64,000 bases of DNA from Podarcis gaigeae (GCA_964106915.2 OZ066926.1), one strand, 5' to 3'; positions 1 through 24,712 are shown, counted from the stretch's first letter. Notes: generated by a model from the letters alone, not told the origin. A program made the numbers and translations.

Positions 1-279
1 AAACACCCAACTTCCCACTTCCCCTCACCACCCCACCTGTCTCATAATCTGCAAGACACCACTGAAACCTGGTTTGTGGTCCTTTATTCAAAACCTCTTG
101 ACCCTGAACCTTTCCAACCTGAGACCGACTGACTCTTAACTGTCCTCTAAACTTAGGATCCATGGAACAACAACATTATAACTGAGAGAGCTATATGTGA
201 GCAAAGCATATGAATCAGGGGAGCCTACATTCCATCTCAGTTTAATACTGGGCCTCTGGTGACTTCCATTTTGTAACAC

Positions 280-2400: not shown

Positions 2401-3519
2401 GAACCCACTGTTTACAATGTATCTCAATCTAATAGGCAGCTGAGCCTTACACTAGTTTCTGCATTTTAACTGCATCCTCCTGTGCAAGAACATCTTATGT
2501 AGCTTCCTTCCACGTGTGGTTGATTCTTCCAAATATAAGCAGCTATGATACAAAAACTTAATCCTCAACAATGATCTACACCTTTCAAGTTGTCAAGGGT
2601 TAAAGTAGCAAAACCATATTGGCCTTGAGGGAATGAAGTTAACAAACCTTAGATTACTATGCTGGAAATTAGTCTTCTCTCAGCTGCAATTAGGCTGTGC
2701 TTAACTTTGTTAATAGCAATTGCCCAACAGTATAAAAAACTGAAACAAATTTACAAAATGACCCAATGCCTACCCTACTAGTGCTGCACAGTATCTGCAG
2801 TTTTTTTTGTATTACTATATTATTTAAACATGAAATACCTAGTGTTGCAGTTAAGTGATGATAAACTTTTAACCCTTATATGTACACTGTAGTTTGCAAT
2901 CAATCTGCAAAGAACCTCTACATATTTTTTCTATATAAAAGCAAGCCCCACTGAGCTCTATGTGAGTCACCACCAAGTATATTATTTATGATGGCATTTA
3001 AAATATTTTTACCCTACCCTTCAGCCGACCAAGCCACCCAAAGCAGTTTACAGTAATGAGTAATATGGTCCCCTCCTTTACAATCTAAAACACCTGGCAA
3101 AAGGAAACGAGATTGGAAGGTGGGGAGCATTAGGGCTGCGATTCTGACCTGGGAGTAAGCCCCACTGAATTTAATGGCGTTTAGTTCTGAGCAGACATGG
3201 CAGGGTTTGCAGCTTTAGTTGCGAAATCCTTACAGCTGCGGGGCCGAAGCAAGAGTCCTGTGGCTGCTAGTCACTTTACTTTATGGATGGGGCCAGGTAG
3301 GTCTCACCCTTTCCATAATGTTCTTCGAGGGCGGCACGGGGAGCAGCCTATATATGAGAAAATACATAAAATTATATGGCGGTGGGGTGGGAAAGCACAC
3401 GGTGCTTTTAAGCTCCACAAGAAAAACGCAACCAACCCAATTGTACGAAAGAAAATGGGCGGGTCAAGGAGTGGAGAAGCAAAGCAAAGAAGAGAGAGGA
3501 GGGGGGGGGAAAGCAACTC

Positions 3520-3900
3520 CCTCTAGTCACGTGATAGACGAAGCGATCACATGACAGAGGGCTGGTCACGCGGCACGGTTACCTCCCCGGAAGCTACGGC
3601 GCTTTGAGGATCAGGTGACCAGAGGAGGCCAAAGGGGGAAACCGGTCACGTGGCGGGGGCTGGCTGGGTGAATGTGCCGGGCGGGCTTGGCTGAATCGCC
3701 TGGGCCTGAGGAAGGTGAAGGGAGGAGAGCGGGGCTGGAGCGCAGGGGGGCCGCCTTGTAGTTGGGGGGCAGCCGGCCAGAGGCAAAGCGGGCAGCCGGG
3801 GCTTGGGGCGGAAGCGACGGGGCTCCTTGAGTCAGGGCCTTCCCGGGGAGGTTCTCTTTTTTTAATTTTAAAAAAGGAAAAAGGATCCCCCTTCAGGCGG
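3520..3900 (+). promoter_or_regulatory. CpG-rich promoter of the NUFIP2-like gene with clustered E-box/CLEAR-like motifs
   Basis: GTCACGTGAT 3526, ATCACATGAC 3546, GGTCACGCGG 3564, ATCAGGTGACC 3610, GGTCACGTGG 3644; ETS CCGGAAG ~3587; GC box GGGGCGG ~3805; local CpG enrichment. Confidence 0.7.
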
Positions 3901-4703
3901 AGGGTTCCTGGCTGTGATTTTGAGAGCGTCAGGCTGGGCCTAGAGTTATCTGAGCTCTGACGAAACAAGTGCCCCAATTGACGGAACTGGGAAAGGGAGG
4001 CCGAAAAGGTTGGAAAAGGCTGCGGAGGAAGTTTGCGACCCCCAGAAGCGGGGGCGGTAGATCTGGGCTGGTGGGGTTTTTTTAATAAAAAAAAGCAGCA
4101 AAGACTGCCGGGCAGCAAAGCTGTTAGTAAAGGTTGCGGGGTGGGTGGGAGTCGCCTCGAGTGTGGGGGTGTAAGCAAAGGAAAAAGCTTTTTTTGCTGC
4201 TCGTTAAGGAAGAAAGCTTCTGTTACGGTTGTAGGGAGGTGCCGCGTTTGGGGCTGGATCCTTGGGTTGATTGGTTTTTCAGCCGAGAAGCGCTAACTGG
4301 GGTGGGTGGGGTACCGTAGGGCAGACAGACAGCTAAAACAGGTGTTTGTATACAGCGTAGGGTGTTGAAGCCTAAGCTGCAGAGGTGGAAAGGAGTGTAG
4401 GTACAAATAGAAGTAGTTTCCTTTGGTCCTTCAAGCTGCTGTAGCATTTCAGAAGTTGGGGAGCTCTGCGGGGTATCTGGCAACTTTCTCTGCCACTGAG
4501 GTAACTTTTGCCTTAGGAACAGGCTACTAATTTGCAGTGCAGGGAAACAGAGGAAGAATAGAGTCCCTGGGCACGCTGTGGTGTTTTGCTTGAAAAGGAG
4601 GCTGAGAGCAAGACTGTAGTCAGGACTCTGGGGTATAGGAATACCTTCCACACCCTCGAAGCTCTATTGCTGTTGAGATCTGCATCACACACAGTCAGAG
4701 GCC

Positions 4704-7700
4704 ATGCAGAAGGAGGAGCTGGGAATGGATGAAAATCGCAACCCAGAGGAGGAGCTGCGTCTCCTCGGTGGAAAGAAGGAAAAATGCCACAACCTCAGCA
4801 ACCGCATCCGGACAGGTAACTTAAACTGCATCCAGTATTTTATCTTCTTCTAAGTCACTTCTGGTCCTCCAGAAATGTTGGACTCCAACTCCCATGAGCA
4901 CTAAGTCAGCATGACCATTGGTCAGGGATGATGGAAGTTGTAGTCCAGCAACATCTGGAGAGCCACAAGTACCCCAACCCTTCACCATCGCCAACTCAAG
5001 ACTGGCTACTAAAAACCCAGCTTCTTGCGCACCCAGAGCTTTGGTGTTGGTGCTTAGCATTTTGAAGCATTTCCTTTAGTTCCCAACGACCTCAGCAGAT
5101 CCTTGCCCTTATCAATCCATTCACACACACCCCAAACTCCTTGCATACATCTGTTATCCATTTAATCCTAAACTGAATTCTTGGGACAAGCAAGCTTTTT
5201 TCACCACTAGAGCGCATCCTTATTTCAATTTCCTTTACCTCAGCCCTATAGTGTCTATCTGATTTGTGGAGCTGTGAACCCCCATCCCCCAAGCTAAGTT
5301 TCCTGCTCCCCCCCCCCCAAAAAAAGTTTCAGACAGCCCATGTTGGGAATCCTACCCTAAACCATCAGCTGCTGCATCTCCACAGAATCATGCAGACGTG
5401 CCCCTTACCTGGTAAATCTCAACTTACTGGATCGCACTCCCTTCCCAGAGTTTGTTTCCTTTTCCTTACTGGGGCGGGTCCTATTTGGCTATTAATTCAG
5501 TGGCTCTGGTTTGATTAACTGCCTTTTGTAGCATGCATCTAAGTTCTAGCTGTCCTTAATGCATCTAAATGTTGAAAATAAAACCTTCTTTCTGTCACGC
5601 AGGGGGTGGAGCAGAGCTGGGCTACAGGCCAAGCCGGGTCTCCAGAGAAGGTGTGTTGTACTGAACTGGGATTGGCCGTTCCCCTTTTCCTTTCTGTCAT
5701 GCTTTTTCTGCATGTTTTTCTGTTCCAGAGGTGGCTGCACCTCAGTGCTGGGTGAGGTACATTCATCCTGAGAACCTAGAGCCCTGAATGCCCACCCTCT
5801 ATGCTCCCCATCTTCTCTTCCCTGTTGAAAAGATGTGGAGAAGTGATTATCTGCCACTGTGCTTCTTTACTAGATACCCATGTGGGAAAAGTAGCATGTT
5901 CTTCATATCCCTTTCCTCCTCCTGTTCCACTCCTGGGGTATACTTAGGAGAGGAATGAAGGCCTACAGATGGGAAAACGAGGACTCTTTAATTCTCTGGG
6001 CAGCAAGGCCAGAGCTCAGTGGCTTACAGGAAGGGATCCTAGAATTATTGGGAAAGGGTTTGAGGAACCTGAAATTGGTTAGGGCTTGAGAGAAGGGATC
6101 TCATAGGTTTGAGCTCTTCAGCATGAACACCTCTGATTCCATTCCCCCCCCCCCTTTGCTAATCACAATGTAGAGAAGCTTGGAAACTTGAAGACAGCAT
6201 GTTTTGAATGCTAAATAACCAGAAAAGCGGGGAGTGGGCTAAACCAACCTCCGAAGTGGTATTTTCATATGATCTCCTGATGTTGCTGAACTACAACTTC
6301 CGTCAGCCCCTGTCAGTATGGCCATAAAGATGCAAAATATGGTTCAGCAGTTTCTGGAGGGCAAAAGGTTCCTTGTACTTGTCTTAGAGTTTATAATTCA
6401 TTAATAAATATCAGAAGAGGAATCCCCCCCCCCCCGCCATTTTATTGACTAAAGATCACTGTTTTGGAATTGACTGAGTTAGCAGCACGGAGAGGGGTAT
6501 TGAAATCACTTAAGTGATGTGAAGATTTTAGCCACCTGCACACCCCAGATAAACGATCTCGAGGGTATTTTAACCCCATGGGCTATCTGCCTTATCTATG
6601 ACCTGTTGACCCCAAACTGAGAGAGGTGAATGTGTCTGCATTCCAGATAAATGAAAACCAGAAATACGTTCAAATATTTAGATATCATATTCAAGTACCT
6701 TTTAATCCCCCAATTTTCTTACCCAAACTCCAAACACTAACTGAGCAGTCTGGTATTTTGGGAGGGTTGGAATGAACTGCGCTGAGGCACCATTTTTGTT
6801 GATGGTGCACTTAACATAAGCTCCCTACCTGCCGAAATAAAAAATGGGGTTGCTGCTCTGAGGTGCTTACATTCTAGGTGTGAGAGGGTGACAAAGGGAC
6901 GTGAGACAGGCATGGTCTTCACCCTTCCTCTTCTTCCTCTTCAGGTGCCTGGGAGTCCAACGGGTATACTGCTCCCTCTGAGATAGCTGACGAACCCAGT
7001 GTTCCCCTGAGCCCTTCCAACAGCCTCAACATCCGCAATCTCCAGTTGTCTGAGCGGGACCCTCCTGTTGCCCACCATCCCCACCGCTACCCTCATCGCT
7101 TTTACCATGCCCGCCCCTTCCATGCTACAGCATACCGCAAGACCTACCGAGGCAGCCCCTCAGACCGCAAGGAATGGGGACCTAGCACAAACGGCCATCA
7201 CTGTGCTCCTGAGAGCATCTCCAACGGGCGGTGGCAGCACCGGCGCCGCGGCTATTCCGACCCACCCTCCCCGTCGTCGTCTCCCGAATCCGAACGAGGC
7301 AGCACCATCAAAGCCAGTGAGAAGCCTGCCGCCACATCTAGTGCCGCCAACACAGCCAACGAGGATTCTGGGAAGGAAACATGGTCGCTCTTCCGGCCAC
7401 TTCCCGCTTTCCCTGTCGATAGCAGCAGTGCCCGGATCATCCCCAAGATCTCTTATGCCAGCAAGCTGAAAGAGAACCTGGATCAACCGGGGAAAGCCTG
7501 CCATGTTCCTGCCTCAGCCGTCCGCACCACCAATAGCCTCCCCAACTGTGTCTTGGCGCCACCCCCAAGTAGCCCCCCGCCATCTGACAGCAGTCGGCGA
7601 CAGCACCTGGGAGCCATCTTTCAGAATGAGTGGGGCCTCTCCTTTATCAACGAGCCGGGGGCTGGGCATGGAGGGGGTGGCGGGACGGCACCAGACGTGG

Positions 7701-9590
7701 ATGAACGAGATGCAGATGCTGGAGCATCCTGGGAGAAAATGGAAGTTAGCGACTGGCAGGCTGCAAAAAATTACCATCTGGACGGTAAGGTGCTGGAAGG
7801 AGCCCAGTCATTGGGCATGAGGGAAAGGGAGGAGAACCAATGCATGTGTGTTGAGGCTTGGGAGCTGTTCCATAGGTAGCTGAACATAGTCAAGAGAGAA
7901 GGGATGGAAGACACAAGGAAATGCTTCACTTGGAAAGCTAGGGATGTTTGTGAAGATGGTGAGTGAAGGGGCAGTCACACAGCACAAAGAACTTTTGCAG
8001 TTCATGAAAGTGGAGAGGTGTTGGGTAGTATTGGCTGTCAGAAGAAATAAAGGACAATCTCTTCCCTGCTCTGAGGTTGATTTCTACTATAGTTTACATT
8101 TGCTCTACAGACTAGGGCATGAATTACTTTGGGTAGAAGATGATCAAATAGCCTATCCCTACCTTTTCTGATTACTTTGTCAGCTATTGTTTTTAGAAGG
8201 CTAAAGAGGTAGTTATAGATGGATATCATTTAGCTCCCTCATAATTTTAAACATTGCTCCAGAGAGCACAGATTCCCACATCCAGTTTTATGTAGCTTGG
8301 GAAAAGGTTTGGATGGGCATGTGACCTTCAGTGCACTGAGACCCCAACTTTTCTCAGTGTGGCTGAACTTTCGGGGCATTGTCTTGAGAAGTGAGCAGCT
8401 TCAGCTGTGCTAGGGGGTTTTAGGGCACTGGGGCTTATTTACAAACAGTGCTTGGCTTCTTCTAATTTCCCTTTTCCCTTTCCCCCTCTTCTAATACAGA
8501 GTGGAGACATATATGGGAGCTACACAGTCAAGGTAAGCAAATGGAGGTGCCTGGGCCTAAATCAGTGGCTTCATAAATAAGACCTTTAGGGCTCAACAGT
8601 GGGCTGGATAGCTTCATATTAAAGGGGGTATGAAGATTTGCAGTAATGTACAACAATGTGAAGTGGAAGGGAGCAGAGTCCTAGGACAGGGATGTGACTC
8701 TAAGAATTGTGGGTGTGTAATTCATACTTTCCAATCCTTGCCATATATTCAGTTGCGTCTCCCTCTCTACTGTACCACACATGCAAAAAACAAACAAAAA
8801 CCCACAAATTTAATCTGACCACTCGTATTTTGAAAAAATCCAGCCTTTTGTGAGGATTGCTTTCAGAAGCTGAGGGGCACTGATTCTACATTTTAAGACT
8901 GTGTCTTTTCGTGGTTTGCTTTTTAATGTTGTGCCCTGGATGTGTTTGAGTGCATGTGCTCCATAGCTTTGAAGCCCTAACTGGTAGGAGGTGCTGGCTT
9001 TTGATCATCTAACACAAGTTTAAAATTACATTTTGAAAATGCTTCTGACCCCACATCATTTGCCTGGAGAACTTGAGTCGGTGACACTGAAGACAAGTGC
9101 CACTGCCAGCCTGGGCCCATGAGCCAGGCAGCCAGGCAGGTTTTCTATTCATGTAGTATCAGGCAGGAGCAGGTAGATGCTATCTAAAAAACTGGGGTGA
9201 TTGGTTCTGTGCAGTATGGGGAAGTGAATAAACTGGGCCTTATGAAGTTGTGTGATGGGAGATAGGAAAGAGAAGTACAGCTGCGGAAATCCACAACTAT
9301 CTGATGTTGGATGTGGAGCTGCCTTAAACAATTCAACCAAATCACAAAAGAGCTGCATATGTGGGAACAGATTAATGAAGGGTCTGTTCTGTGGCCAGCC
9401 ATTGAGGATAGCGGGGAGAATAGTGGGGCTTCGGGCAGGGGTGTGTGTGTGTGTGTGTGTGTGTATACACACATTATCTATGGCACATCTCCCTTCAAGG
9501 CATTGTTCCTGTTGCCATCACTTTTTCTTTTTCCATCTAGATCCTAGCAGAGTGACGGTCTACACAGACACCTTCGATGGGAAGGGTTAA
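4704..9590 (+). CDS. NUFIP2-like protein (FMR1-interacting protein 2 paralogue), 344 aa, 4 coding exons
   Basis: Exons 4704-4815 (gccATG..ACAG|gtaac), 6945-7784, 8500-8532, 9541-9590 (TAA). All introns are GT-AG and phase 1; 1035 nt, in frame. Blocks match NUFIP2: WSLFRPLPAFPVDSSSARIIPKISYASKLKENL, QHLGAIFQNEWGLSFINEP and C-terminal DWQAAKNYHLDEWRHIWELHSQDPSRVTVY. AATAAA at ~9882 and ~10374. Confidence 0.88.
9440..9463. repeat. (GT)n microsatellite
   Basis: Direct GT dinucleotide run in the last intron of the NUFIP2-like gene. Confidence 0.95.
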
Positions 9591-11269
9591 CTTCAATAAT
9601 TCCCAGGGGAAGCACCGCTAAGACATGAGGGGGGGCACATGGGCAGAGGCAAGATGCCCACCCCACCCCCCTTGAAGACTGGAGAAGCCCAAGCATCTTG
9701 AAAGGGGAAGCTCTGCCACCTGCCTACCTCCCTCCCTTTGCTGTTATAGCTCAAATTGTCTCAGTGGGGCTAACGCCTCACCTCTCTTTTTCTCTCTTGC
9801 TCTCTCTCTCTTTCTCTCTGATTTAATGCTCTGGTTTTTAATTTCTTCACATGGTTTTTAATTTCTCTGGATTCCCCTGAAAATAAAGGCAAAAAAAGAA
9901 TTTATTTAAATTCACTTCTCTTGCCTTGTCAGTGTCTCATTATTCATTGCTACACAGGTGTGTTATCAGCATGGGGTAGGTAGTGATGTGGCTCAAGGCA
10001 CTGAAAATGGTTTGGGAGGGAAATTATTTTAAGGGATAGAGATGGAAAAACGTGAAAAACATGATTTTTGAAAGCACAAAGGAGAAGCTTTGGGAAGTTT
10101 ACCACAAGGAACTATTAATATAGGGCAAAGAAATAGTTTTATTTGTTTATCCACTGAAGAATTTATAAGCTGCATTCTCATAAGTATTGACAAGGTGGTA
10201 TGCAACATACAAGATAAAACCACCAAAGGCATCATTAAAAACATCAGTAAATACTAGTTACCACAAAGGAAAGAAATGTGAAGGCCTGTCTATAAACAGT
10301 TTTCAGAAGATGTCTTAAAGAAGGCAGGGGTGATTTCTACTGAAATTGTGACTTGATCAACTTGATTTAATAGGAATAAAATATTTGCTCAGTGTGTCTT
10401 CTGCCAGCATAGTGACGAGATTATGCCAAGCATAACTTTACTTCTAGGTATCTTTTAGATGTACAGTGCTAGTTTACCTAAATGCTAATTAATGGTTCGA
10501 TACTCTTTATTTCTATTCTCATGTGCTGAGCTTCTAAGCTGGTTGCCACTGTAAAAAAGCTCCTCACTTTTAAAAATAAGATTGCCATCTTAAAAGCCAG
10601 TAAACTGATGCGGCCAATTTACTGAAGAGTAAAGCCTACAGAGCACAATGGGGCTTCTCAGTAAAGATGCTTAGTTGCAGTGGTAATGAGGAAGTGTGTG
10701 AAATAAATCCCCACCACAATTTATCATGAAAGCCAAAGGAAGGAGCCATCTGTGTCCTGTTGGGTAAGAGTGCAGTGTTGATAGCCTTCATAGGGGCAAA
10801 ACATTTTCTTAGCCCAGCTGTTTTGTAGAAAAATACAGAAAGCTATGAGCCCAATCTCCCCCTGCCCCCTGAAATGGTATTAAAATCAATGGGATGGGTC
10901 CATGTAAACATTGCACGGTCTGAATTGCTTGCTTATTTGAACCTGAGCCTCCTTTTATACAAACCTGAGCCTGGGTTGCTTTGCAGTTACTCTTTTCTGG
11001 GCTTAAAAACACAAGTAGACAAGTAACAAAAAATGAGCCATATAACTCACTGTTCCTGACCTGCACTGGGGGAGGGGGAGGAGAAAATGCGCTCTTTGTT
11101 GGTTTGCCTCTTTTAAAAGGTGACTATTTCATAAGAGTTGACCTAAATGTAGCTAAAACCGTTTTTGACGATACAATATATTAATGATCTATAAATAAGT
11201 ACTCTTTGCCCTCGACCAAAATGGCTCTCAAAGCTTCCAGTAGTTGTGGTAGCTCTATGCTCTTCGGAA

Positions 11270-11630
11270 GACTCTCCTCTATGGTTCCGAACAGCCGTTA
11301 TACGGGAAGGCGCACGGCCTCCTCTCTTCCGAGGCCTAAGTCGATGACGTGATTTACAGTGTAGGGAGCAGCACTGTTTCTATGGCGGGAGCGTAGCGCG
11401 AGGCGCGTGCGCGCCTGTGCGTCACTCCAAAGCGCCCATTCGCCCGCGGATTGAGAGCGGCGCGGAGGAGTCTCGCCTGCGCGCGAGAGTAATACCTGAT
11501 AGGATTCCTTTGCAGGAGTTAGGAAATGGGTGTGCGCAGCTGCCTCTTAAAGAGGCAGAATCCTCGAGTAAAAGGGGAAGTCGCCTGAGCGCCAGCCTGG
11601 AGGGCAGTAGAGAACAGGACGGAGGTAAGA
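11270..11630 (+). promoter_or_regulatory. CpG-island promoter and non-coding first exon (probable TMEM219 exon 1; possibly shared with the Harbinger-derived ORF)
   Basis: CpG-dense, with CRE-like TGACGTGA ~11345, NRF1-like GCGCGTGCGC ~11403 and a strong donor GAG|GTAAGA at 11624/11625. It is the only non-transposon CpG island between the NUFIP2-like gene and the TMEM219 coding exons. Confidence 0.7.
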
Positions 11631-12399
11631 TAAGGTTGCACCTTTCTTAACTGTGTGCCATTCTTGCATTTCTCCCCCCCCCCCCCCGGGTCTGTTCTCC
11701 ATCTGGTTATTCTCATCTAAATCCTTTTGTTCAGCTATTTTGGAGCAAGGATTTAGGTTTCGAAGAATGTAGCCCCTTGGGGGATAAAATAGGGGGTTTT
11801 TTTGCCCTCGTTTGCTGCCTCACACCAAGTCAGCCCATTGGTCCATCTTGTATTGTTTACTCTGACTGGTAGCTGCTCTCCAGGGTCTTTCTCAAGCTGA
11901 ACGCTTCTAGCTGCATGGCCAGAGGTCGAACTTGCATTTTCTGAATGCCAAATATTGACTTTGCCTCTGAACGATGGCACCTCTCAGTCAGAGAAAGTCA
12001 CAATTGGTATCCTATACATGCCGCAATCCTTTGCATATATATGCCCAGAAGTGAATTCTACAGTGGAGTTTATTTCTTAGTAAGTATGCATAGAATTGCA
12101 ATTGAGAGAGATTAATACACTCCCGTATTTCTGGGGCTTAGACTATTTACAAGTGAATGCATTTTTTTCTCAGTGCACAGCTGAAAAAGAAGTTATATGT
12201 CTACCTTCCATGTGAAATCTGCGAAATTCCCCATGATCATTAATTACGGTATTCCTAAAGCACTTCTTAGCAAGCAATCTTGGTTTTCAGTGCTCTTCTT
12301 GTCACTATGGAAGTCAGTCAGCCACATCATTGTTTCTCACCATGCTTGATGGACTTTTGCAATTAAGAAAGTTTCTACCTGGATCTCCTAACCCTAATG

Positions 12400-12606
12400 T
12401 GGTGCTGCGGGTGATGTGCCAGACTAGGACCGGGGAGACCAAGATCCAAACCCCCCATTCAACTATGAAGCTCACAGGGTGGTCAGTCACTGTCTCTCAG
12501 CCTTACCTCACCCACAGGGTTGTTGTGAAGATAAAATGCAGGGACAGCGACGTATGCCTCTTTGAGCTCCTTGGAGGAAAGGTGGGCTATTATGTATTAA
12601 ACGAAT
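12400..12606 (+). mobile_element. CORE/MIR-like SINE fragment (similar copies ~13115-13330 on + and ~41960-42190 on -)
   Basis: Contains CTCTCAGCCT(T)ACCTCAC..CAGGGTTGTTGTGAAGATAAAATG core-like sequence; recognised from memory. Confidence 0.6.
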
Positions 12607-13434
12607 AACACTGCTGTACCACACTAACCATCTTCACATGTACTTACTCATATTTCTCTCTAACCCAAAAGCTTATTTTGAGCTGGGAGCTTAACCTGCC
12701 GGGAACCTGTTTTGAGTGCTACCACTGAACCATGAAATAACAGTAAGCCATGCTGTTGGTTCTCATCTGGCAAGAGGGCTGTGGTTTGCACATGGCATGC
12801 TGCCTTTTGGCCTTCCCTCCCCAGACTCAATAGCTGAGCAGGCAGTTTTCGTAAAGATAGGGCAGGATTCAGTTATCCTATTTCACTAGCAGACAAAGAC
12901 TTCTACTAGCCTAATGGGGCTTCACCCACCTTACGCCTCTCCCAAATCTGCTCTGAAGGATCATGAGAACCCACAGAACAGATCACAGGGAGGAGAGGGG
13001 AAATTGTTCCATCAAGCAAGCAGCAGACAGAACAATCTCCTTAGCGCTAGCCAGAATTCCACCCATGGTGGTTGTTTTTTAAATCACAATTGTCCCTCAG
13101 TAATTTAATAAGAGAAAGCTGGTGTAGTGTAGTGCCTGAGAGACTGAGCTATAAGTCAGAAGTCAGGACTGGTTTGGATCTTACCTCTGCCCTGAGCTCA
13201 CAAGGTGCCTTGGGGAAGCAATTCTCCTTCAACCTCACCCCTGTTGCCGTATTGGGGGATAATGCAGATTTACAGACTTACAACTGGATGATGCATGTGA
13301 ACTACTGTGAGCACTTGAAAGCAGTCTAGGAATATGAGGTATTGTTATTAACAGGACAAAAGACGCCTCTACAGTTGTAATGTGAGCAGGCTGTGTGCTC
13401 CCATTGCACATTAGTGTCTGTGCATTCACACGTG

Positions 13435-13570
13435 CAGGCACCCCCAAACTCGGCCCGCCAGCTGCTTTGGGACTACAACTCCCATCATCCCTAGCTAACA
13501 AGAGCAGTGGTCAGGGATGGTAGGGATTGTAGTCCCAAAGCATCTGGAGGGCCAAGTTTGGGGATGCCTG
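13435..13570. mobile_element. Short palindromic hAT-type MITE (family with degenerate copies ~4860-4980, 6270-6380, 42940-43030, 45367-45502, 55500-55590, 61910-62010)
   Basis: TIR CAGGCACCCCCAAACT / AGTTTGGGGATGCCTG; internal inverted GACTACAACTCCCATC / GGGATTGTAGTC; 8-bp TSD CACACGTG / CACATGTA. The copy at 45367-45502 has TSD CCCTAGAG / CCATAGAG. Confidence 0.8.
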
Positions 13571-14051
13571 CACATGTAGGTGCACTTGAGATGAAACACA
13601 CCTATAGATTCAACTGTGTGTGTTTGTGTGTGAGAGATGAATGCTGGAGAATGAGAGCTCTAGTACGTGATTGCTAATGTGATTTTGGTAACAAATTCCC
13701 AAAGGCAGGGCCACAACTAGAAATAGGGACGGATAAGGAGTTTCCCAGTAGATCCTTTGTTAGAGTTTAAACCAAACCACTTTCTGTCTCCAGACTATCT
13801 GTCTTTCCATGCCACTATCTTGGCCACCCTTCCCCTCTTCCCTATACCCAGTCACTGCTCTCTCATCTCTTCCTTGTCTTTGGCAACTGAGTATGGGATG
13901 ATGATCAGATTAAATGAAGGGCTCTTCTGCCTTTCAAATAAGTATTTAGAAGATAGTGGCTTGTACAGAACTACGTAGGAACCCAGGCTGCAATTGAAGC
14001 TGGTACCTCTATCAGTAATAGGGTCCCAAAGCTCTCTCTGTGTGTCTATGT

Positions 14052-15391
14052 CAGTGTTTCCCAACCTTTTTTGGGCAAAGGCACACTTGTTTCATGAAAA
14101 AAATCTCGAGGCACACCACCATTAGAAAATGTTTAAAAAATTAACTCTGTGCCTATATTGACTATATATAAAGTAACTCTCTTTAATAGGCATCAAATAA
14201 ACACAAAGAAAGTACCGGTATTTTATAATTACTTTATTATGAAATAGTAAGTACCGTATTTTTAGGACGCTCCGTCCCATAGGACGCACCTACTTTTTTT
14301 GGGGGGGGGAAATAAAGGAAAAATTTTTTTCCTTTATTTCCCCCCCCAAAACCAGGTCGGGGAACAGTAGGATGGCGGTGCTGCGCCTCCCTGCTGTCCC
14401 CCGAGCTTGTGGGGCTGGCCCATGTCTGCCTGGCGCGAGGGGCGCTCTGCTTCAGGGCGCCCCGCGCATCGGGCGGCAGGCTACAGTCCGCAGCATGGGG
14501 AACCCTCTGTTTCAGGGCGCCCCACGCACCCCCCCCCGGGTGCGCAAGGCTTGCCAACACGAGCGCGGAGCACGGGGCGTCCTCCGAAGGGCGCCCCGTG
14601 CTCTGCGCCGCCCGCAAGCCTTGCGCTCCTGGGGGGAGATCCCCTGGGTGCGCAAGGCTGGCCAACACCAGCGCGGAGCACGGGGCGTCCTCCGAAGGAA
14701 CGCCGCCATCCCGCTGTCCCCCGACTTGGTTAGAAGGCTGGCGGGGGGAGAAGCCTGCTCCTCCCCGTCGCCAGCCCCGCAAACTCGGGAGACAGCGGGA
14801 GAGGCGTAGCGCGCCCACCCGCTGTCTCCCGACATGGTTTGGAGGCTGGCGGAGGGCTTCCTCCTCCCCCAGCCCCGCAAGCTCCCAGAGCTCTGGGTCC
14901 CGTTCTGGGGGAGGGGAAAGCTCGGGCTTCCCCCGCCCCAGCCCCGCGTCTCCAGCCGGGAGACGGTCGCGCTTTAGCCCCGTGCGTGCTCTCCCAGCTG
15001 GAGAGGTGACGCGCGCCTATGGAGGCTCCTGCCATAGGCGCGCGTCACCTCTCCAGCGGGGAGAGGGTCGCGGGGGGCTGCTTTAGCCCCGTGCGTGCTC
15101 TCCCAGCTGGAGAGGTGACGCGCGCCTATGGAGGCTCCTGCCATAGGCGCGCGTCACCTCTCCAGCGGGGAGAGGGTCGCGGGGGGCTGCTTTAGCCCCG
15201 TGCGTGCTCTCCCAGCTCGAGAGGTGACGCGCGCCTATGGCAGGAGCCTCCATAGGCGCGCGTCACCTCTCCAGCTGGGAGAGCACGCACGGGGCTAAAG
15301 CAGCCCGACTCACCCGCCTCCCTCCCACGGCACACCCGGCAACTTCTCGCGGCACACTAGTGTGCCGCGGAACACCGGTTGGGAAACACTG
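14052..15391. mobile_element. Young non-autonomous hAT (Charlie-like) element, 1340 bp, with CpG-rich tandem and hairpin cargo
   Basis: Perfect 15-bp TIR CAGTGTTTCCCAACC / GGTTGGGAAACACTG; perfect 8-bp TSD GTCTATGT (14044-14051, 15392-15399); repeated subterminal GGCACAC motifs; 22-bp perfect palindrome at 15348-15369. Confidence 0.93.
14971..15306. repeat. 109-bp tandem hairpin repeat (units start 14971, 15080, 15189); the last unit is a long palindrome
   Basis: Each unit contains the stem GAGAGGTGACGCGCGCCTATGG / CCATAGGCGCGCGTCACCTCTC around a 9-nt loop. 15184-15240 and 15250-15306 are 57-bp inverted arms with one mismatch. Confidence 0.95.
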
Positions 15392-16605
15392 GTCTATGTG
15401 GTTTGCATCCAGCCCTAACCATGTTATTATTTAAAAGTAAGTACCACTGAGTTCAGTGCGATTTGCTTCCAACCAAGGATGTGCAGGGTTGCAGCTCTAA
15501 TGTACTGAGGACACACGGAAAACTGTGTTGCATGAGAAAAATCAATATTCCCTGTGGAAGGGGGAGTGGGGGAGTTATTGTAGCAGAGAACATGTAGATC
15601 AGTTCCCAATGTTCTTCATTGTTTTTGTAGTAAGTCAAAGTTGGGCATTAAATGACTTCTGGGCGTTTTGCTAAGGATGGTGGAAGAGCAACTGAACTGA
15701 ATTATTTGGGTCAGTAGGCCAACAGAACTGCTCTGATTCCGTGAGCTTTAACCACTGAGAACACATTAGCATTCTGCTCATTTCACAGAAAAGAGGATTT
15801 AAAACTGTTCATTTCGCTGTAGTCATGGTTCAAATGGAATATTTGGGGGGAAATAAAGTACAGCTGTCTCACTAACTTGCGCAGAGGTGGAGCTGTGGAA
15901 AAGTGGTAAGATTTTAAATCTCACAGGATTTACCTCAGAACCTGATTTGCAAGACTCAGCCTAATTGCCTCTGAGCATGTATAGAGCACTTTCCCATCAC
16001 TGCTGAGTAACTCCTGTTGGGCTGAGCACACCTGAAACAAGCAGGGATGCTGAGCCTCTGAAGCCAATTAAGTTACAAATCAGATATCAGGTGGTTGACC
16101 AGTTTTGAGTTAGAGTCCTAGCTTCAGAGAGTAGGCAGTTACTGGAGGTGGGTGTGGGTTGATGTAAGACAAACATTATGGGAGTAATATAGCAATGTGA
16201 TTGAGGGGTGGTCAGCTGGAAGACTGTTTATGGGCGCTGGAGGTAAGCTGGTATGGGGAAGACATATGCAACTCTGAAACCTTTAAGAATTTTGAAATGT
16301 AGAACGTGCAGAGATTGGACCTTTCCCAAGTGTGGTGGAATAAATTTCTTATGCTCAATCTATTTTGCTGTTTAGAAGAGCCCTTCACGGTTGAAATACA
16401 AATATGATTCTGTTACAATATATTGCCCTTCAGCTCAACAGCACCTTTCCGGCTGAAGCAGAAGGACTGGTGATGTCTCGTCCCTGCCCAGCGACATCAT
16501 CCCTGCCTTGGCTAAGGGTGTAGCAAGGGGAAGGTTTTTCTCGTAGCACCTTCACGCCACTTCCTTCCGAGCCTTCTGCAAGCTTCTTCAAGAGCGGCCG
16601 AATAA

Positions 16606-17961
16606 ATGGAGCAGGAGTGCCTGGCTCTGGTTGCTGCCTGCGTCCAAACCTCCCAGTTGCTGGTGCAGCAATGGATGCTCAACAGGCGCACGGTGATTTT
16701 CGCCATAGCGAGGATTCTGCAGAGGAGGCGCTTCCGCAGGTCAGCCGCGGTGCTGAGGCGCATCCTCTCAGCCAGCGTCCGCCGCAAGAGAGCCCTGCTG
16801 CGGCTTCACCGGAACGCCATCGTCTCCGTGGTCACCATGGTGTACTCGTCTTCCCCCGCGCTGCACTACGAGCACGAGCTGATGGCCTTGTCTGAGCGCT
16901 CCCACTGGATGCTTCCCAGGTGCAGCGAATGGTGGGAGCGGATGATCAACTCTGAGCAGGACGACAAGTGCTGGATTTCCTTGTTCAGGATGTCGCGGTC
17001 CACACTGATGTACATCGCCGAGGAGCTGCGCCCTGCCCTGCAGCGCCGGGACACGGGCATGCGCTCTCACATCCCTGTGGAGAAAAGAGTCGCCATGACT
17101 ATCTGGAAGCTGGCGCACCACGACAGCTACAAGACCGTCTCAGAGCTCTTCGGGGTGGGGATTTCGTCAGCCTGCTCGATATTTGAAGAGGTGTGCGAGG
17201 AAATAAACAGCAGGCTGCTGGCCCAAATCATTAAGCTGGGAGACCCGCAGGAGATCATTGAGGGCTTCAAGGAGATGGGTTTCCCCAACTGCCTTGGCGC
17301 AATCGATGCAATCCACATCTCCATCCTCTGCCCCCCGTTCTCTGCTGACTCCTACATTAATTGCAAGGGTTTCTATTCTATGGTGCTGCAGGCCCTGGTG
17401 GACAGCAAATCCCGGTTCACCGATATCTACGTCGGCTTTCCGGAGAGGTCCCACGACTCCCGCATCTTGCACAACTCTCCGTTCTTCAACAGCATGGACG
17501 AAGGCACTTTTGGGCCACAGACGCCAACGGTGCTGGAAGGCGTTTCGATGACCCCTGTCATAATTGGGGATCCTGCCTATCCGCTTCGGCCCTGGCTCAT
17601 GAAGCCGTACCCAGCGCCAAAAACCGGGGCCCAGGAAAAATTCAACGAGCGGCTCGCTAAGTGCCGAGCGTGTGTGGAGAGAGCTTTTGGGGTCCTGAGA
17701 GCTCGCTGGAGGTGCCTGCAGATGAGGCTGGATGTGAGGGAGAAGCTCATTCCGGTGGTCATAGCCACCTGCTGTATCCTGCACAATATCTGCGAGATCA
17801 AAGGGGATGAGTTGCTGGAGCCGTTGGAAAGCCCCGCAGTGGCTGAAAGCCAGAATGCTTCAGCCAGGCCAAGGGTGCCCTTGTCAGAGGCTGGACTGAC
17901 CAAGAGAGCTTGCCAGATCAGGGCTGCTTATTGCTCCTATTTTGAAAAGAGCCCTGTGTAA
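16606..17961 (+). CDS. PIF/Harbinger-family DDE transposase-derived protein (HARBI1/ALP1-like, DDE_Tnp_4 type), 451 aa, intronless
   Basis: Uninterrupted ORF. N-terminal Harbinger motifs WWER..DDKCWISLFRMSR, VEKRVAMTIWKLA and the HTH-like YKTVSELFGVGISSAC; catalytic motifs GAID, IGDPAYP, VERAFG; C-terminal CCILHN. Acceptor TTGCCCTTCAG at 16433; AATAAA ~18093. The sequence does not look like the HARBI1 orthologue, so no symbol is given. Confidence 0.92.
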   Translation: MEQECLALVAACVQTSQLLVQQWMLNRRTVIFAIARILQRRRFRRSAAVLRRILSASVRRKRALLRLHRNAIVSVVTMVYSSSPALHYEHELMALSERSHWMLPRCSEWWERMINSEQDDKCWISLFRMSRSTLMYIAEELRPALQRRDTGMRSHIPVEKRVAMTIWKLAHHDSYKTVSELFGVGISSACSIFEEVCEEINSRLLAQIIKLGDPQEIIEGFKEMGFPNCLGAIDAIHISILCPPFSADSYINCKGFYSMVLQALVDSKSRFTDIYVGFPERSHDSRILHNSPFFNSMDEGTFGPQTPTVLEGVSMTPVIIGDPAYPLRPWLMKPYPAPKTGAQEKFNERLAKCRACVERAFGVLRARWRCLQMRLDVREKLIPVVIATCCILHNICEIKGDELLEPLESPAVAESQNASARPRVPLSEAGLTKRACQIRAAYCSYFEKSPV

Positions 17962-18446
17962 AGTGGGGTGGGGGTGGGGGGAAACAAAGCAGGCTCGTTT
18001 GTCCATGTAATTTCATGGGTGTGTATGACCTGGTTGTAGTATACAGACCCTGTATTGCTGATGCCTAGTATGTGGTAGTTTTCTACATGTCAAATAAAAA
18101 GGCTATGATTTTGAGTGGTCTGCTGCTATATTTTCTAAGAGATAGGATTTTTTAAAAGGTAATTGCTATGGTAAAAGCATAGGGTGGGACTTGAACCAAT
18201 GATGGTGTAAAATAGAAGAGTGAACAGTTTTTCTTAAAGAGGATTTATATACCTACCACTCGTATCTGTAAAACATTAACAAAAAGACATGGTATACCTG
18301 CCTAATGAAAATGGAAGTTCATGGACAAATTTTCTAGCCTGTTAGAAAGTACACTCTGGATGCAATCCTATGTACACTTACCTGGGACTACGTTTTACTG
18401 AACCCTCTGGGACTTTCTGTGTAATCCTATCATGTTCACCCAGAAA

Positions 18447-20940: not shown

Positions 20941-23011
20941 CTTACACTAATAGCAAATTCATTCTCCCAGGTGTGGATCCTTGTGCAGCTAAAAGTGCAT
21001 GATGAGTGCACGTGGAAGAGATATTCAGGAAGAACTGAACATGCTCAGTGGCTATAGAATATTGACTCTCAGTTGAATGGAGGGAAGAATGGATAAGCGG
21101 GAGGAGGGAAAATGGAATATCCAGGAAAAGGGCATGGCTGGCTGGCAGGAATTCCAAATAGGAGCCTCCATACTGCAACTTTTTGTTGCAGGTTCCACTT
21201 GTCATGATTAATAGCTAATGGTAAAACACATTAATTCTCCATGAAAGTGTGTTTAATCCATCTATGCTAGTGCCCATCACCACATCTTGCAGTGTGGCAG
21301 GGAACCATTTGTGGGCTTAAAAAGAGCTCATGATGATCGCGTGGGCACAGCCAAGGGCTAATCTGTATGTTAAGAATGTATGAATGCTGGATCAGGCCAA
21401 TGGCCCATCCAGTTCTCTTTGCAGCCAGCCAAACGCCTGTCAAAAGTCTGCAAGCAGGATCTGAGCACAACAGCCCTGTCCTCACATACAATTCAGCAAA
21501 GGTACAGGAGATCACATACTGCACAATGATCTTGCTAGCAGTTCACTGCAGTATCTGCTAGCAAGTTGTTTGTGTGATGTAAACACACCAACATTTGTGA
21601 TATATAGCACAAAACAAGTCTACTATGAAACTACGCACTCACATGCAATTCTTAAGAAATATGGGGAGAAACTCTCACAAGACCAGAAGACTCAAAGGAG
21701 GGAAGCCTTATATAACAAAGGAATGGAACAAAACTAAAACATCAAACAAATGTGGCATTCAGTTTACCATTGTTTATGCTGCTTATTCATTTTGTGGGGG
21801 GTTCTCTCTGTTGGTGAATTTTGAGGGCACACACAAAGATCAGCATCCCCATATTCTTTTTTAAAAAACTTTATTTAACAAAGGAAAAACAATGTGATCA
21901 ACAACAGTGCATCATGTGGCACATTATACTTTAAGATTTGACAGAGATTGTTAAAAGTAACCTCCTTATAAAGTTTTTCCCCTTCCTCATCCCCTACAAA
22001 TAACACCACACTGCGAGAAGACTTGGCAATGATGAGATTGCCATGTTGGGTGGAGCAAATGAAGCAACTATGGGTTGCAATTATCCAACTTTCACCTATA
22101 ATTCCAGCTCTTTCTTTCCAACTTAATCGTGTTGAAATTTGCCACCTTCATCAGAAATATAGAGAAGTAGGAAAACCTGTCAAGTAGGAAAACCTTACCT
22201 GTATATCCTTGAGTGCGACCTTCTTTCATACAAGCAGAGTCATCCAGCCAGTTGCGATGATCAAGAATCTAGTGGTTGCTAACTTCTAAGTCCCCCCCCC
22301 CCCCGCAATGCATAGATTTAGAGCTGATTTAAACAATGAGGTGTATGTAGTGGAGTTTTCCCTGAGGGCCTTACTATGTCAAGATACACATGGGCGGTGG
22401 TTACTTGTCTAAAAACACCCCAGTCAAAATATATTCATTTTATTAATTTTTGAATTGCCTTTCACATGTCTCAATCTGAATTACAATATAAGCAACTAAC
22501 ATACTTTTAAAAGCAATACAAGATGGAGACCTTTTCATCCAGATGGAAATGTTTGTTGAAACAAAATGTCTTCAGGTTTTTTTGGAAAGCACATAAAAAA
22601 TGAATATGAAGTAGCAGTAGATCACCTTTCCATTTACGTGGCGATCTTGAGGCAGGGGCAATCTCAAGGAAACCAATTCCCACTTTATTTTCAGCAAGTT
22701 TAGTCCCTTTAGACAACCAGACTGCATGCACGCTAAATATTTAAATAATCACTGAGCAATTTATGAGATTCAATTAATATCTTTTGGTGTTATTTCCATT
22801 CACATTTCTGGGACACGATTTGACTTTTTAAAATTTATTTATTTAATAAAGCAAAGCTTATGATTGTACCACACAAAATGCAAAGGGGAATAGGTAGCAC
22901 ACCGCCTGCCTTTTCCTTACCCTTGATTCTGGCTGTTCCAGCAGACGTTTCAGCTTCTTCTAGTGCTGGGATGACACTGCAACCTTCTTACCCTCATTCC
23001 TAGGGTTGACC

Positions 23012-24712
23012 ATGGTCACCTGCTCCCTGCTGGGCTCCCTGCGTGTCTGCCTGGAGCGACACCCACCTCTGGTCACCTTCTTCTTTTGCCTCCTTTCGTT
23101 GGCTGTTGCCTTTGTTGGTTTTGCTGCCTACATCCAGTCACATGATGTTCAGAATCCCGATGTCAAAGAGGTGAGCTAGAGATGATCACCTTAAGTAGAA
23201 AATCAGACCAAAATGCTGGGGGTGGAATTGGGTTGTGGTTGTAAAGCACGCATGAGAGACTTTAGGAGGCATGTTAGGAGGTAGAGGCAGACTTGTGTGA
23301 TTTATCTTTTGGCAATTGTTTTTATTTATTACCATTTTCTAACAGACTTGAGAGATTTACCCAAATTTGAACAGCTGCATTGATTTGCTCTCAAAAATAG
23401 TGTTGCCTGTGTTGGCTGCTGTTATCATACCATAATGACCCAAGCTAAACATTCATGAATTACAGAGGGTTGGGTGTTGTTGGTTTTTACAAATACGCTA
23501 TAAGAAACTGTCATTGAAAAAATAGTCCTGAATGGATACTATCACAAGAAGTGGGGAGCAAAAGAATAGGATATTCAACAGTACAAAATTTTAAATTAGT
23601 AGGTGCAGCTATATCTGAAATATTCAACGATCCGGCTGTTCTGAGATGTTTTATGGTACTTTTAAAATACAGTTCCCATCTTTCAATTTTCTAGCTGTTA
23701 AGAGCAAAAGGGAATTTTTAGAGGCAAGATTGGGTGAAATTGGAAAGGTACTTTAAAAGGCAGAAGCAAATGAAAAAAATGCAATCAAGAGAATAGAATC
23801 AACTAAGAGTCAATTCTCATTCCTTTCCCTCCCTCATCTCTAAGGACTGGAATTCTCTGCTAAAGTCTCTGGCACACTTAATGTTCTGTATCCCAAATAA
23901 GACGCAGGAAAGTGCCTTGACACCAGCTCCTTCCACAACCACTGCTGAGACCCCTACAACAGTCTCTGTCATGGTTGGCTTGACCTTTGACCTCCACAAT
24001 GGCACAGATCCTCCCAATGGTACACGTCTAGGTCTGACAGTCACTGGGGAAAAACTGGGTCTCAAAGGTGAGTGATTTCTCACTCCTGACCAATTGCAAC
24101 ATCCTCCCAAAGATTTCAGAAACTCTGGTTCCGTGTCCGTCTCCCCTTGACCTTTCCTTCCATCAACTTCCAACCACAGGTCCAGATGCCCAGGAATCAA
24201 TCCACTTCCTGACTATCATCACGAACTCAGTCTCCCATGAGAACTGCCTTAGCATCACTGCACCTTCATCCCTTCTCCCCAAGACCAGGTGAGCCAAGAG
24301 ATTTAGTTTCAAGGAGTTCTTAACCCATTAATGCAATACTCCCATCTTGTCCCCAGACAACCACCTAAATGTGTGATAGAGGAATGGGACATGCACCAAG
24401 AAGAGACAGGAATTTGTTACCAGCCACATTACCAGGCTAATCCTGCCCTGTCCAGCATGCTGGATCAGGTAAGATGAATGTGGGCAGTGACAGTATCTGG
24501 ACCTGGGGATTCTGGGCTTCTTCAGGATGCAAGCTGGATTATAAGGGGAGGAGCATTCACTGTTGCACTCCTTTCACTCTCAGGCGGATCGTGCCCTCTG
24601 CAGCCAGCGGCTCCTGATGACCAGTGCTTTCCTTCTCTGCCTCTGTGCCATGCTATGTTGTGCAGCTGGCCTGTGCTATCCTAACCCCAGAGACAAGTGG
24701 GGGCAAATCTAA
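23012..24712 (+). CDS. TMEM219: Transmembrane protein 219 (IGFBP-3 receptor), 243 aa, 5 coding exons
   Basis: Exons 23012-23170 (acceptor 23003, accATGg; MVTCSLLGSLRVCLERHPPLVTFFFCLLSLAVAFVGF..NPDVKE), 23845-24067 (DWNSLLKSLAHLMFC), 24180-24288, 24357-24468, 24584-24712 (DRALCSQRLLMTSAFLLCLCAMLCC..TAA). GT-AG introns, phases consistent, two TM segments, AATAAA 24861. Lies upstream of TAOK2 on the same strand as in mammals. Confidence 0.92.

What the first reader, a model, noticed from the sequence alone, without database searches (positions are those of the whole stretch)
16434..18110. Candidate newly domesticated Harbinger transposase nested in the TMEM219 5' intron as an alternative terminal exon
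Seen: a stop-free 451-aa PIF/Harbinger transposase with D-D-E motifs (GAID, GDPAY, VERAF) and GC/CpG-rich coding sequence in AT-rich flanks. It has an acceptor at 16433 and an AATAAA ~130 nt after the stop, and lies in sense orientation between the CpG-island exon (donor 11624) and the first TMEM219 coding exon. No TIR pair, TSD or Myb/SANT second gene was found, although nearby MITEs keep clear TIRs and TSDs. Established: autonomous Harbingers carry TIRs plus a Myb-like gene; domesticated derivatives (vertebrate HARBI1/NAIF1, plant ALP1 and HDP1) have lost mobility, and the plant ones act in chromatin complexes. Inference: this is an independent lineage-specific exaptation, expressed from the host promoter by splicing 11624->16434 and competing with TMEM219 for the same first exon.
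Basis: partly seen in the sequence, partly recalled or inferred. Interest (0 to 1): 0.85.

Follow-up and report, generated by a model that had tools for sequence, protein, structure and literature searches.

The report
Lizard-and-snake gene from Harbinger transposon
About 200 million years ago a jumping gene landed inside the TMEM219 gene of the ancestor of lizards and snakes, borrowed its host's promoter and first exon, and has since been kept almost unchanged as a real gene whose job is still unknown.

Summary
Confirmed and extended. Window 16606-17961 (a lacertid lizard) encodes a 451-aa PIF/Harbinger transposase with an intact D234/D322/E358 triad, no TIRs and no Myb gene. The same 451-aa ORF is 94-99% identical across geckos, a cordylid, lacertids, an amphisbaenian, iguanians and snakes. 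All seven intact copies whose DNA was read sit between NUFIP2-like and TMEM219, with dN/dS 0.015-0.05. It is absent from the gap-free turtle interval. Transcript contigs of three related lizards carry the predicted 11624->16434 GT-AG junction, and RefSeq files the protein as a TMEM219 isoform in eight species. It is therefore an ancient squamate domestication, not a recent one, expressed as an alternative terminal exon. Its sister is a multicopy leopard-gecko Harbinger, whose Myb protein also has a conserved host relative (candidate partner). One timber-rattlesnake assembly carries a pseudogene. Probably glimpsed before: Novick 2011 proposed five unplaced 442-466 aa anole Harbinger ORFs as domesticated. 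The locus, splicing and selection were not found in the literature searched. Function is inferred: most likely a Myb-partnered nuclear regulator; an active nuclease is not excluded. The scan had not noted it elsewhere (look-up covers this genome only).

The parts
11400..11624 (+). Non-coding first exon in the TMEM219 CpG-island promoter, shared by both transcripts; 5' end approximate, donor GT at 11625-26
   Evidence: CpG island; transcript contigs start 11459-11494 and end at 11624/5; GAG|GTAAG donor kept in cobra, anole, cordylid, Podarcis; weak homology to the turtle CpG island upstream of TMEM219, E about 0.003
15661..15823 (.). Conserved non-coding element 600 nt upstream of the acceptor; present in all lizard loci read, not found in two snakes or in turtles; probably cis-regulatory (inference)
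   Evidence: no Rfam match; no unusual folding
16400..16441 (+). Branch/pyrimidine tract and acceptor AG 16432-33 (used in lacertid transcripts); a second, invariant AG at 16440-41 is the only AG at this site in cobra and cordylid
16434..16605 (+). 5' leader within the terminal exon, conserved in sequence across squamates; in-frame stops upstream of the ATG in most species, so no fusion protein; a 16-codon uORF at 16473 in lacertids
16606..17961 (+). 451-aa Harbinger transposase-derived ORF: long basic N-terminal helices (aa 1-94), HTH region (about 130-208), RNase-H-fold DDE core (229-399), C-terminal helix
17305..17679 (+). Catalytic triad codons D234 (17305), D322 (17569), E358 (17677), with H237 and H283-D284; invariant in 16 orthologues
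18093..18098 (+). Polyadenylation signal AATAAA, invariant in six aligned species and present in two more
23004..23170 (+). First coding exon of host TMEM219 (acceptor AG 23002-03, ATG 23012), the competing downstream exon
   Evidence: TMEM219 gene calls in orthologous loci

Best explanation
A Harbinger transposon inserted into the first intron of TMEM219 in the squamate stem lineage. It lost its TIRs and its Myb gene, and the transposase ORF was kept as a single terminal exon. Transcripts from the TMEM219 CpG promoter either splice exon 1 to 16434 and end at the 18093 poly(A) signal, giving a stand-alone 451-aa protein, or skip to 23004, giving TMEM219. SHOWN: orthology, purifying selection, loss of element hallmarks, absence in turtles, the 11624->16434 junction (confidence about 0.95 for domestication, 0.9 for the alternative terminal exon). 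INFERRED (about 0.5): the protein works like HARBI1-NAIF1, ALP1-ALP2 or HDP1-HDP2. It binds a Myb/SANT protein supplied in trans through its invariant N-terminal helices, is taken to the nucleus and DNA, and acts there as a regulatory or chromatin adaptor rather than as a mobilising transposase. The best partner candidate is the conserved squamate Myb gene P0406-P0410. The confidence given is for the whole statement, including the inferred function.
For: One 90% cluster of 44 sequences; the 15 listed are all 451 aa and span squamates. Same neighbours in 7 genomes. YN00 dN/dS 0.015-0.049 over 21 pairs; dN 0.02-0.03 is lower than dN of TMEM219 exon 2, 0.035-0.07. Junction with GT..AG in 3 of 4 runs; exon-1 contigs stop at the donor, as expected for a fork. 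RefSeq/GenBank name it 'IGFBP-3 receptor isoform X1/1' in 8 species. Residues 51-100 have 0 of 50 variable sites in 16 orthologues, and Harbinger Myb proteins bind the transposase N-terminus and import it (PMC9392472). The sister element's Myb has a host-like relative, 77-92% identical from Pogona to colubrid snakes and 57-64% to the element. Fixed changes at conserved transposase positions on the stem, notably G280E (G in 69 of 70 relatives), F134L and K365R. Plant precedents act in chromatin complexes (PMC4671723, PMC5339849).
Against: No interaction, localisation or phenotype data. The plant chromatin adaptors have lost DDE residues, whereas this one keeps them. The Myb candidate is not linked to this locus, its own locus was not fetched, and its relatedness was judged by identity only. 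The gene is broken in one Crotalus horridus assembly, so it is dispensable at least there. The RNA status of the runs is a guess by the tool, and they are from related species about 97% identical.
Confidence: 0.5

Rival explanations
1. Same domesticated gene and splicing, but the protein is kept as an active metal-dependent nuclease with a host job (DNA processing, repair or programmed cutting), as with RAG1 or PGBD5.
For: D234, H237, H283, D284, D322 and E358 are invariant in 16 orthologues. The confident model has an intact RNase-H/DDE core (pLDDT mostly over 90) matching Tn5 and piggyBac (Z 8.9 and 8.8). Domesticated ALP1 and HDP1 lost triad residues and PGBD3 has D352N.
Against: 380 of 451 sites are invariant, and 100 of 124 Harbinger-conserved columns were kept on the stem, so keeping the triad is not statistically distinctive. 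G280E lies next to the H-D motif, and DGTH became DAIH. No cognate TIR substrate was found.
Confidence: 0.27
2. The protein is a repressor of related Harbinger elements. It sequesters their Myb protein or poisons their transpososome.
For: Related multicopy Harbinger families persist in Eublepharis (sister group), Sceloporus and Elgaria. The invariant N-terminus could trap Myb proteins.
Against: Near-total stasis does not look like an arms race. The gene is kept in Anolis although A. carolinensis has no active Harbingers (PMC3014272).
Confidence: 0.13
3. The exon is kept only as a regulatory decoy that tunes TMEM219 output by early polyadenylation, and the protein is incidental.
For: The exon necessarily diverts transcripts from TMEM219. 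Acceptor, leader, poly(A) site and a nearby CNE are conserved (29-31).
Against: Synonymous sites are near saturation (dS 0.5-2) while amino acids and length are frozen, which is selection on the protein. The rattlesnake pseudogene shows how fast the ORF decays without it.
Confidence: 0.04
4. It is a transposon copy (recent or horizontally transferred), or simply the squamate HARBI1 orthologue.
For: Several databases name it 'putative nuclease HARBI1'. Transposases can show purifying selection across horizontal transfers.
Against: Same insertion site in all lineages, no TIRs and no Myb gene. No mammal, bird, turtle, crocodilian or tuatara hit was above about 50% identity in two searches, whereas HARBI1 is pan-gnathostome (PMC9392472). 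The nearest relative is a gecko transposon.
Confidence: 0.02

Closest known systems
Five anole PIF/Harbinger ORFs proposed as domesticated (Novick et al. 2011, PMC3014272)
   Same: Intact 442-466 aa ORFs, motifs conserved, no TIR or TSD. The 451-aa Anolis orthologue fits the size range and is probably one of them.
   Different: The paper gives no locus, orthology, selection test, host gene or splicing. Identity with this gene could not be confirmed because no supplement is held.
HARBI1 with NAIF1/MSANTD1-4 (jawed vertebrates)
   Same: Host gene from a Harbinger transposase; needs a Myb partner in trans; function largely unknown.
   Different: Independent and much younger event (squamates only), from a different element family, with a long basic N-terminus, nested in TMEM219.
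Plant ALP1/ALP2 and HDP1/HDP2
   Same: Harbinger transposase-derived host proteins without TIRs; the model for Myb-partnered chromatin function.
   Different: They lost DDE residues and have proven PRC2 or HAT-complex partners. Here the triad is intact and no partner is shown.
CSB-PGBD3 exon trap (PMC2268245)
   Same: Intronic transposase used as an alternative 3' terminal exon with its own acceptor and poly(A) signal.
   Different: PGBD3 is a piggyBac and yields a fusion protein. Here the upstream exon is non-coding, so the product is a stand-alone transposase, and it is far older.
Insect DPLG/APLG/BPLG genes (PMC9710019)
   Same: Recurrent lineage-specific PIF domestications diagnosed by the same criteria.
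   Different: There the co-domesticated Myb/MADF gene is usually adjacent; here none is linked.
Squamate Harbinger beside the harbiTRIM cluster (PMC12262214)
   Same: Described as an apparently domesticated Harbinger about 200 Myr old in squamates.
   Different: Different neighbourhood (TRIM/butyrophilin genes; none in this window). Possibly the 483-aa family P0004/P0011, about 43% identical; not confirmed.

Membership tests
PIF/Harbinger transposase (protein family) | DDE_Tnp_4 domain with D-x2-H, H-D and DD35E motifs | tested here: met
PIF/Harbinger transposase (protein family) | HTH region plus RNase-H-like DDE fold | tested here: met
   model pLDDT 82.5 (63); top matches Tn5, piggyBac, Tn3 TnpA at Z 8.4-8.9 (71); Foldseek hits weak, E at or above 0.01 (70)
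Autonomous Harbinger transposon | TIRs with 3-bp TSD | tested here: not met
Autonomous Harbinger transposon | Second Myb/SANT gene in the element | tested here: not met
   tblastn with the sister element's Myb;
Autonomous Harbinger transposon | Dispersed near-identical copies | tested here: inconclusive
   no genome-wide search possible; one copy in the window, one contig per run on the ORF at 88% or more; all orthologues fetched are at the same locus
Domesticated transposase gene | Orthologous position across species | tested here: met
Domesticated transposase gene | Intact ORF under purifying selection | tested here: met
   dN/dS 0.015-0.049 (84); one exception, Crotalus horridus
Domesticated transposase gene | Transcribed and spliced as a host gene | tested here: met
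   (related species; RNA status guessed by the tool, but the joint is GT..AG and unique intron stretches have near-zero depth)
Domesticated transposase gene | Demonstrated host function | not testable with these tools
   needs knockout or biochemistry
HARBI1 orthologue | Present across jawed vertebrates | tested here: not met
   no non-squamate hit above about 50%; absent at the turtle locus (42)
HARBI1 orthologue | Groups with HARBI1 on a tree | not tested
Exon-trap alternative 3' terminal exon (PGBD3 type) | Own acceptor and poly(A) signal inside a host intron, spliced from a host exon | tested here: met
Exon-trap alternative 3' terminal exon (PGBD3 type) | The same upstream exon also splices to the host's next exon | tested here: inconclusive
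Exon-trap alternative 3' terminal exon (PGBD3 type) | In-frame host-transposase fusion protein | tested here: not met
   exon 1 is non-coding; in-frame stops precede the ATG
ALP1/HDP1-type chromatin adaptor | Broken DDE triad | tested here: not met
ALP1/HDP1-type chromatin adaptor | Binds a Myb partner and a chromatin complex | not testable with these tools
   candidate partner only

The most novel reading that the evidence does not exclude
A squamate-specific, catalytically active domesticated nuclease, co-domesticated with the Myb subunit of the same element family at another locus, performing a host DNA-cutting or repair function, with its dose tied in a mutually exclusive way to TMEM219 by one splice choice.
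Probability: 0.15. Interest if true: 0.85.

Novelty: new member of a known kind. Interest (0 to 1): 0.55.

Why it matters
It is a very conserved gene found only in lizards and snakes, hidden in databases as a 'TMEM219 isoform' or mis-named HARBI1/ALP1. What animal Harbinger-derived transposases do, and whether their retained DDE is catalytic, is an open question. This case is unusually testable because three things come together: a young multicopy sister transposon in the leopard gecko as an active control, a candidate co-domesticated Myb partner, and a possible natural knockout in the timber rattlesnake. It also shows exon trapping of a non-coding first exon as a route to a stand-alone gene, and indicates that Harbinger domestication recurred several times in squamates.

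Tried and rejected
PDB sequence search: no relative. Foldseek: only weak DDE/integrase hits. ESM Atlas on aa 1-100: unnamed clusters and a weak DUF8040 lead only. Rfam 9000-30000: nothing. The CNE as structured RNA was rejected (z about 0; little covariation); as a Myb remnant or part of the gecko element it was rejected too. The bacterial promoter scan is irrelevant to a lizard and was ignored. TIR search was at chance level. The Xenopus locus was uninformative because TMEM219 is not within 10 kb. The true ends of the gecko element were not found, since tandem arrays run to the locus ends. The careful tree did not finish, so the quick tree with SH-aLRT only is used; the gecko element is a long branch and test_one_clade was not run. 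Literature searches for TMEM219 plus transposon and for Harbinger plus squamate selection or co-option found no description of this locus.

Full report
Observation. The ORF, motifs, acceptor, donor and poly(A) signal are all present at the stated coordinates. The ORF is 16606-17961, 451 aa, with Pfam DDE_Tnp_4 at aa 233-394 and a DD35E triad D234/D322/E358. The genome is a lacertid: the protein is 99% identical to Podarcis muralis and Lacerta agilis, and the intron aligns to P. muralis at about 93%. The gene order is NUFIP2-like, CpG-island exon, transposase, TMEM219 coding exons, then a kinase gene I read as TAOK2 from its sequence. An inverted-repeat listing and a TIR plus 3-bp-TSD scan gave nothing above shuffles. 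The Myb domain of the closest element finds no remnant in the window or five orthologous loci.

Orthology and selection. The best database hit represents one 90% cluster of 44 sequences. The 15 listed are all 451 aa, from Gekko, Eublepharis, Heteronotia, Hemicordylus, Podarcis, Lacerta, Rhineura, Anolis, Pogona and six snakes. The next hits drop to about 50%. In the six other genomes whose intact copy was fetched, the ORF lies upstream of the TMEM219 coding exons and, where the flank reaches, downstream of NUFIP2-like. There are no indels, and 380 of 451 residues are invariant in 16 sequences. Pairwise dN/dS is 0.015-0.049 (YN00, 21 pairs). Because dS is raised by GC/CpG turnover, I also compared dN alone: 0.02-0.03 here against 0.035-0.07 for TMEM219 exon 2. 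The transposase is thus more constrained than that exon of its host.

Age. In Lepidochelys and Carettochelys the interval from the NUFIP2-like stop to the TMEM219 ATG is gap-free, 1.3-2.7 kb, and holds no transposase. A full HMMER scan found no closer non-squamate relative; the tuatara protein it returned is only 39% identical. The gene is in geckos and in all other major squamate groups sampled, so it predates their split, about 200 Myr (figure from PMC12262214). An unannotated tuatara copy is not excluded.

Splicing. Contigs of four probable RNA runs from related lizards were laid on 11350-17349. Three show a joint skipping 4809 nt with GT..AG ends, exactly 11624->16434. The fourth has an unspliced contig from 16344. 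In three runs a separate exon-1 contig ends at the donor, the pattern expected when the exon has more than one continuation. Unique intron stretches have near-zero depth. The tool only guesses that these runs are RNA, and contigs give no levels. Independent support: eight species' annotations call the protein an isoform of the IGFBP-3 receptor, that is TMEM219; the TMEM219 ATG exon begins with an acceptor in squamates and turtles; and the exon-1 region has weak homology to the turtle CpG island (E about 0.003). The junction to 23004 itself was outside the stretch laid. The donor, leader and AATAAA are conserved. The AG at 16432-33 is lost in cobra and cordylid, but an invariant AG 8 nt downstream remains. 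In-frame stops before the ATG exclude a fusion protein.

Origin. On a quick ML tree of 41 proteins the orthologues form one clade, sister (SH-aLRT 100) to a leopard-gecko family (long branch, no bootstrap). That family has copies 99.5% identical on five chromosomes and a head-to-head Myb gene, so it looks like a recently mobile element. It is 51% identical to our protein. Other squamate families branch separately, so this domestication is independent of them. HARBI1 was not available for the tree; it is excluded by distribution and synteny.

Mechanism. The model (mean pLDDT 82.5) has long basic N-terminal helices, an HTH region and an RNase-H DDE core resembling Tn5 and piggyBac. Harbinger Myb proteins bind the transposase N-terminus and import it to the nucleus (PMC9392472). 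Here residues 51-100 show no variation at all, which suggests a retained partner interface. The gecko element's Myb has a conserved relative in Pogona and colubrid snakes, 77-92% identical among themselves and 57-64% to the element. It is a plausible partner in trans, untested, and its locus was not fetched. The triad is intact, unlike ALP1, HDP1 and PGBD3, but with 81-84% of sites retained this is weak evidence for catalysis. G280E beside the H-D motif is a fixed departure from 69 of 70 relatives. I rank a Myb-partnered nuclear regulator first (0.5), an active host nuclease second (0.27), an element repressor third (0.13).

Counter-evidence. In one Crotalus horridus assembly the orthologous ORF has two frameshifts, a stop at codon 354, a MITE of about 210 nt at codon 408 and nine missense changes at otherwise invariant sites, while C. 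tigris is intact. If real, the gene is dispensable there. It also shows how fast the ORF decays without selection.

Prior art and verdict. Novick et al. 2011 reported five 442-466 aa Harbinger ORFs without TIRs in Anolis carolinensis as probable domestications, with no loci; this gene is probably one of them. A 2025 preprint notes another at the harbiTRIM cluster. The architecture has a precedent in CSB-PGBD3. I found no description of this locus, its splicing or its conservation, but most subscription journals were not searched. Verdict: a real, ancient, squamate-specific domesticated Harbinger transposase; a new member of a known kind; interest 0.55.

Noticed in passing
L019:10001-11573 (Crotalus horridus, GCA_051820455.1): The orthologue is a pseudogene: +2 nt near codon 242, +1 nt near codon 270, stop at 354, hAT-type MITE at codon 408, many missense changes. 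Possible natural knockout; one assembly only.
   Followed up: partly
proteins P0406-P0410 (no locus fetched): Conserved squamate Myb/SANT protein (Pogona, Thamnophis, Pituophis, Erythrolamprus) whose closest relative found is the Myb of the gecko Harbinger element; candidate co-domesticated partner.
   Followed up: partly
L006-L013:2508-10808 (Eublepharis macularius): Young multicopy Harbinger (99.5% identical, five chromosomes) whose Myb plus transposase core is flanked by long tandem arrays of 248-bp and about 655-bp units; ends not reached.
   Followed up: partly
L014:1-14275 (Varanus komodoensis); proteins P0004, P0011: A second squamate-wide 483-aa Harbinger transposase gene, next to a Myb-domain gene and histone H2A; possibly the harbiTRIM-linked element of PMC12262214.
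   Followed up: partly
proteins P0135, P0255 (Elgaria, Phrynocephalus): KRAB-(zinc finger)-Myb-Harbinger transposase fusion models of about 1120 aa; the transposase part has altered catalytic motifs.
   Followed up: partly
protein cluster P0088 (Podarcis, Zootoca, Lacerta, Rhineura): A lacertoid-only 437-aa Harbinger protein, apparently another single-copy domestication, on a contig of the same length as the TMEM219 locus in three species.
   Followed up: no
window 15661-15823: Non-coding element conserved in all lizards read, not found in two snakes or turtles; no RNA structure or Rfam match; unexplained.
   Followed up: partly
window 14052-15392: Young non-autonomous hAT insertion with 8-bp TSD, GC-rich interior with a 109-bp palindromic tandem unit; absent in Podarcis muralis.
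   Followed up: yes
window 4704-9590: NUFIP2-like gene with orthologues in squamates, turtles, frogs and cartilaginous fish; no mammal or bird among the 48 hits.
   Followed up: partly
L017:374-598 (Carettochelys): Unrelated Harbinger transposase fragment upstream of KCTD13, outside the TMEM219 interval.
   Followed up: no
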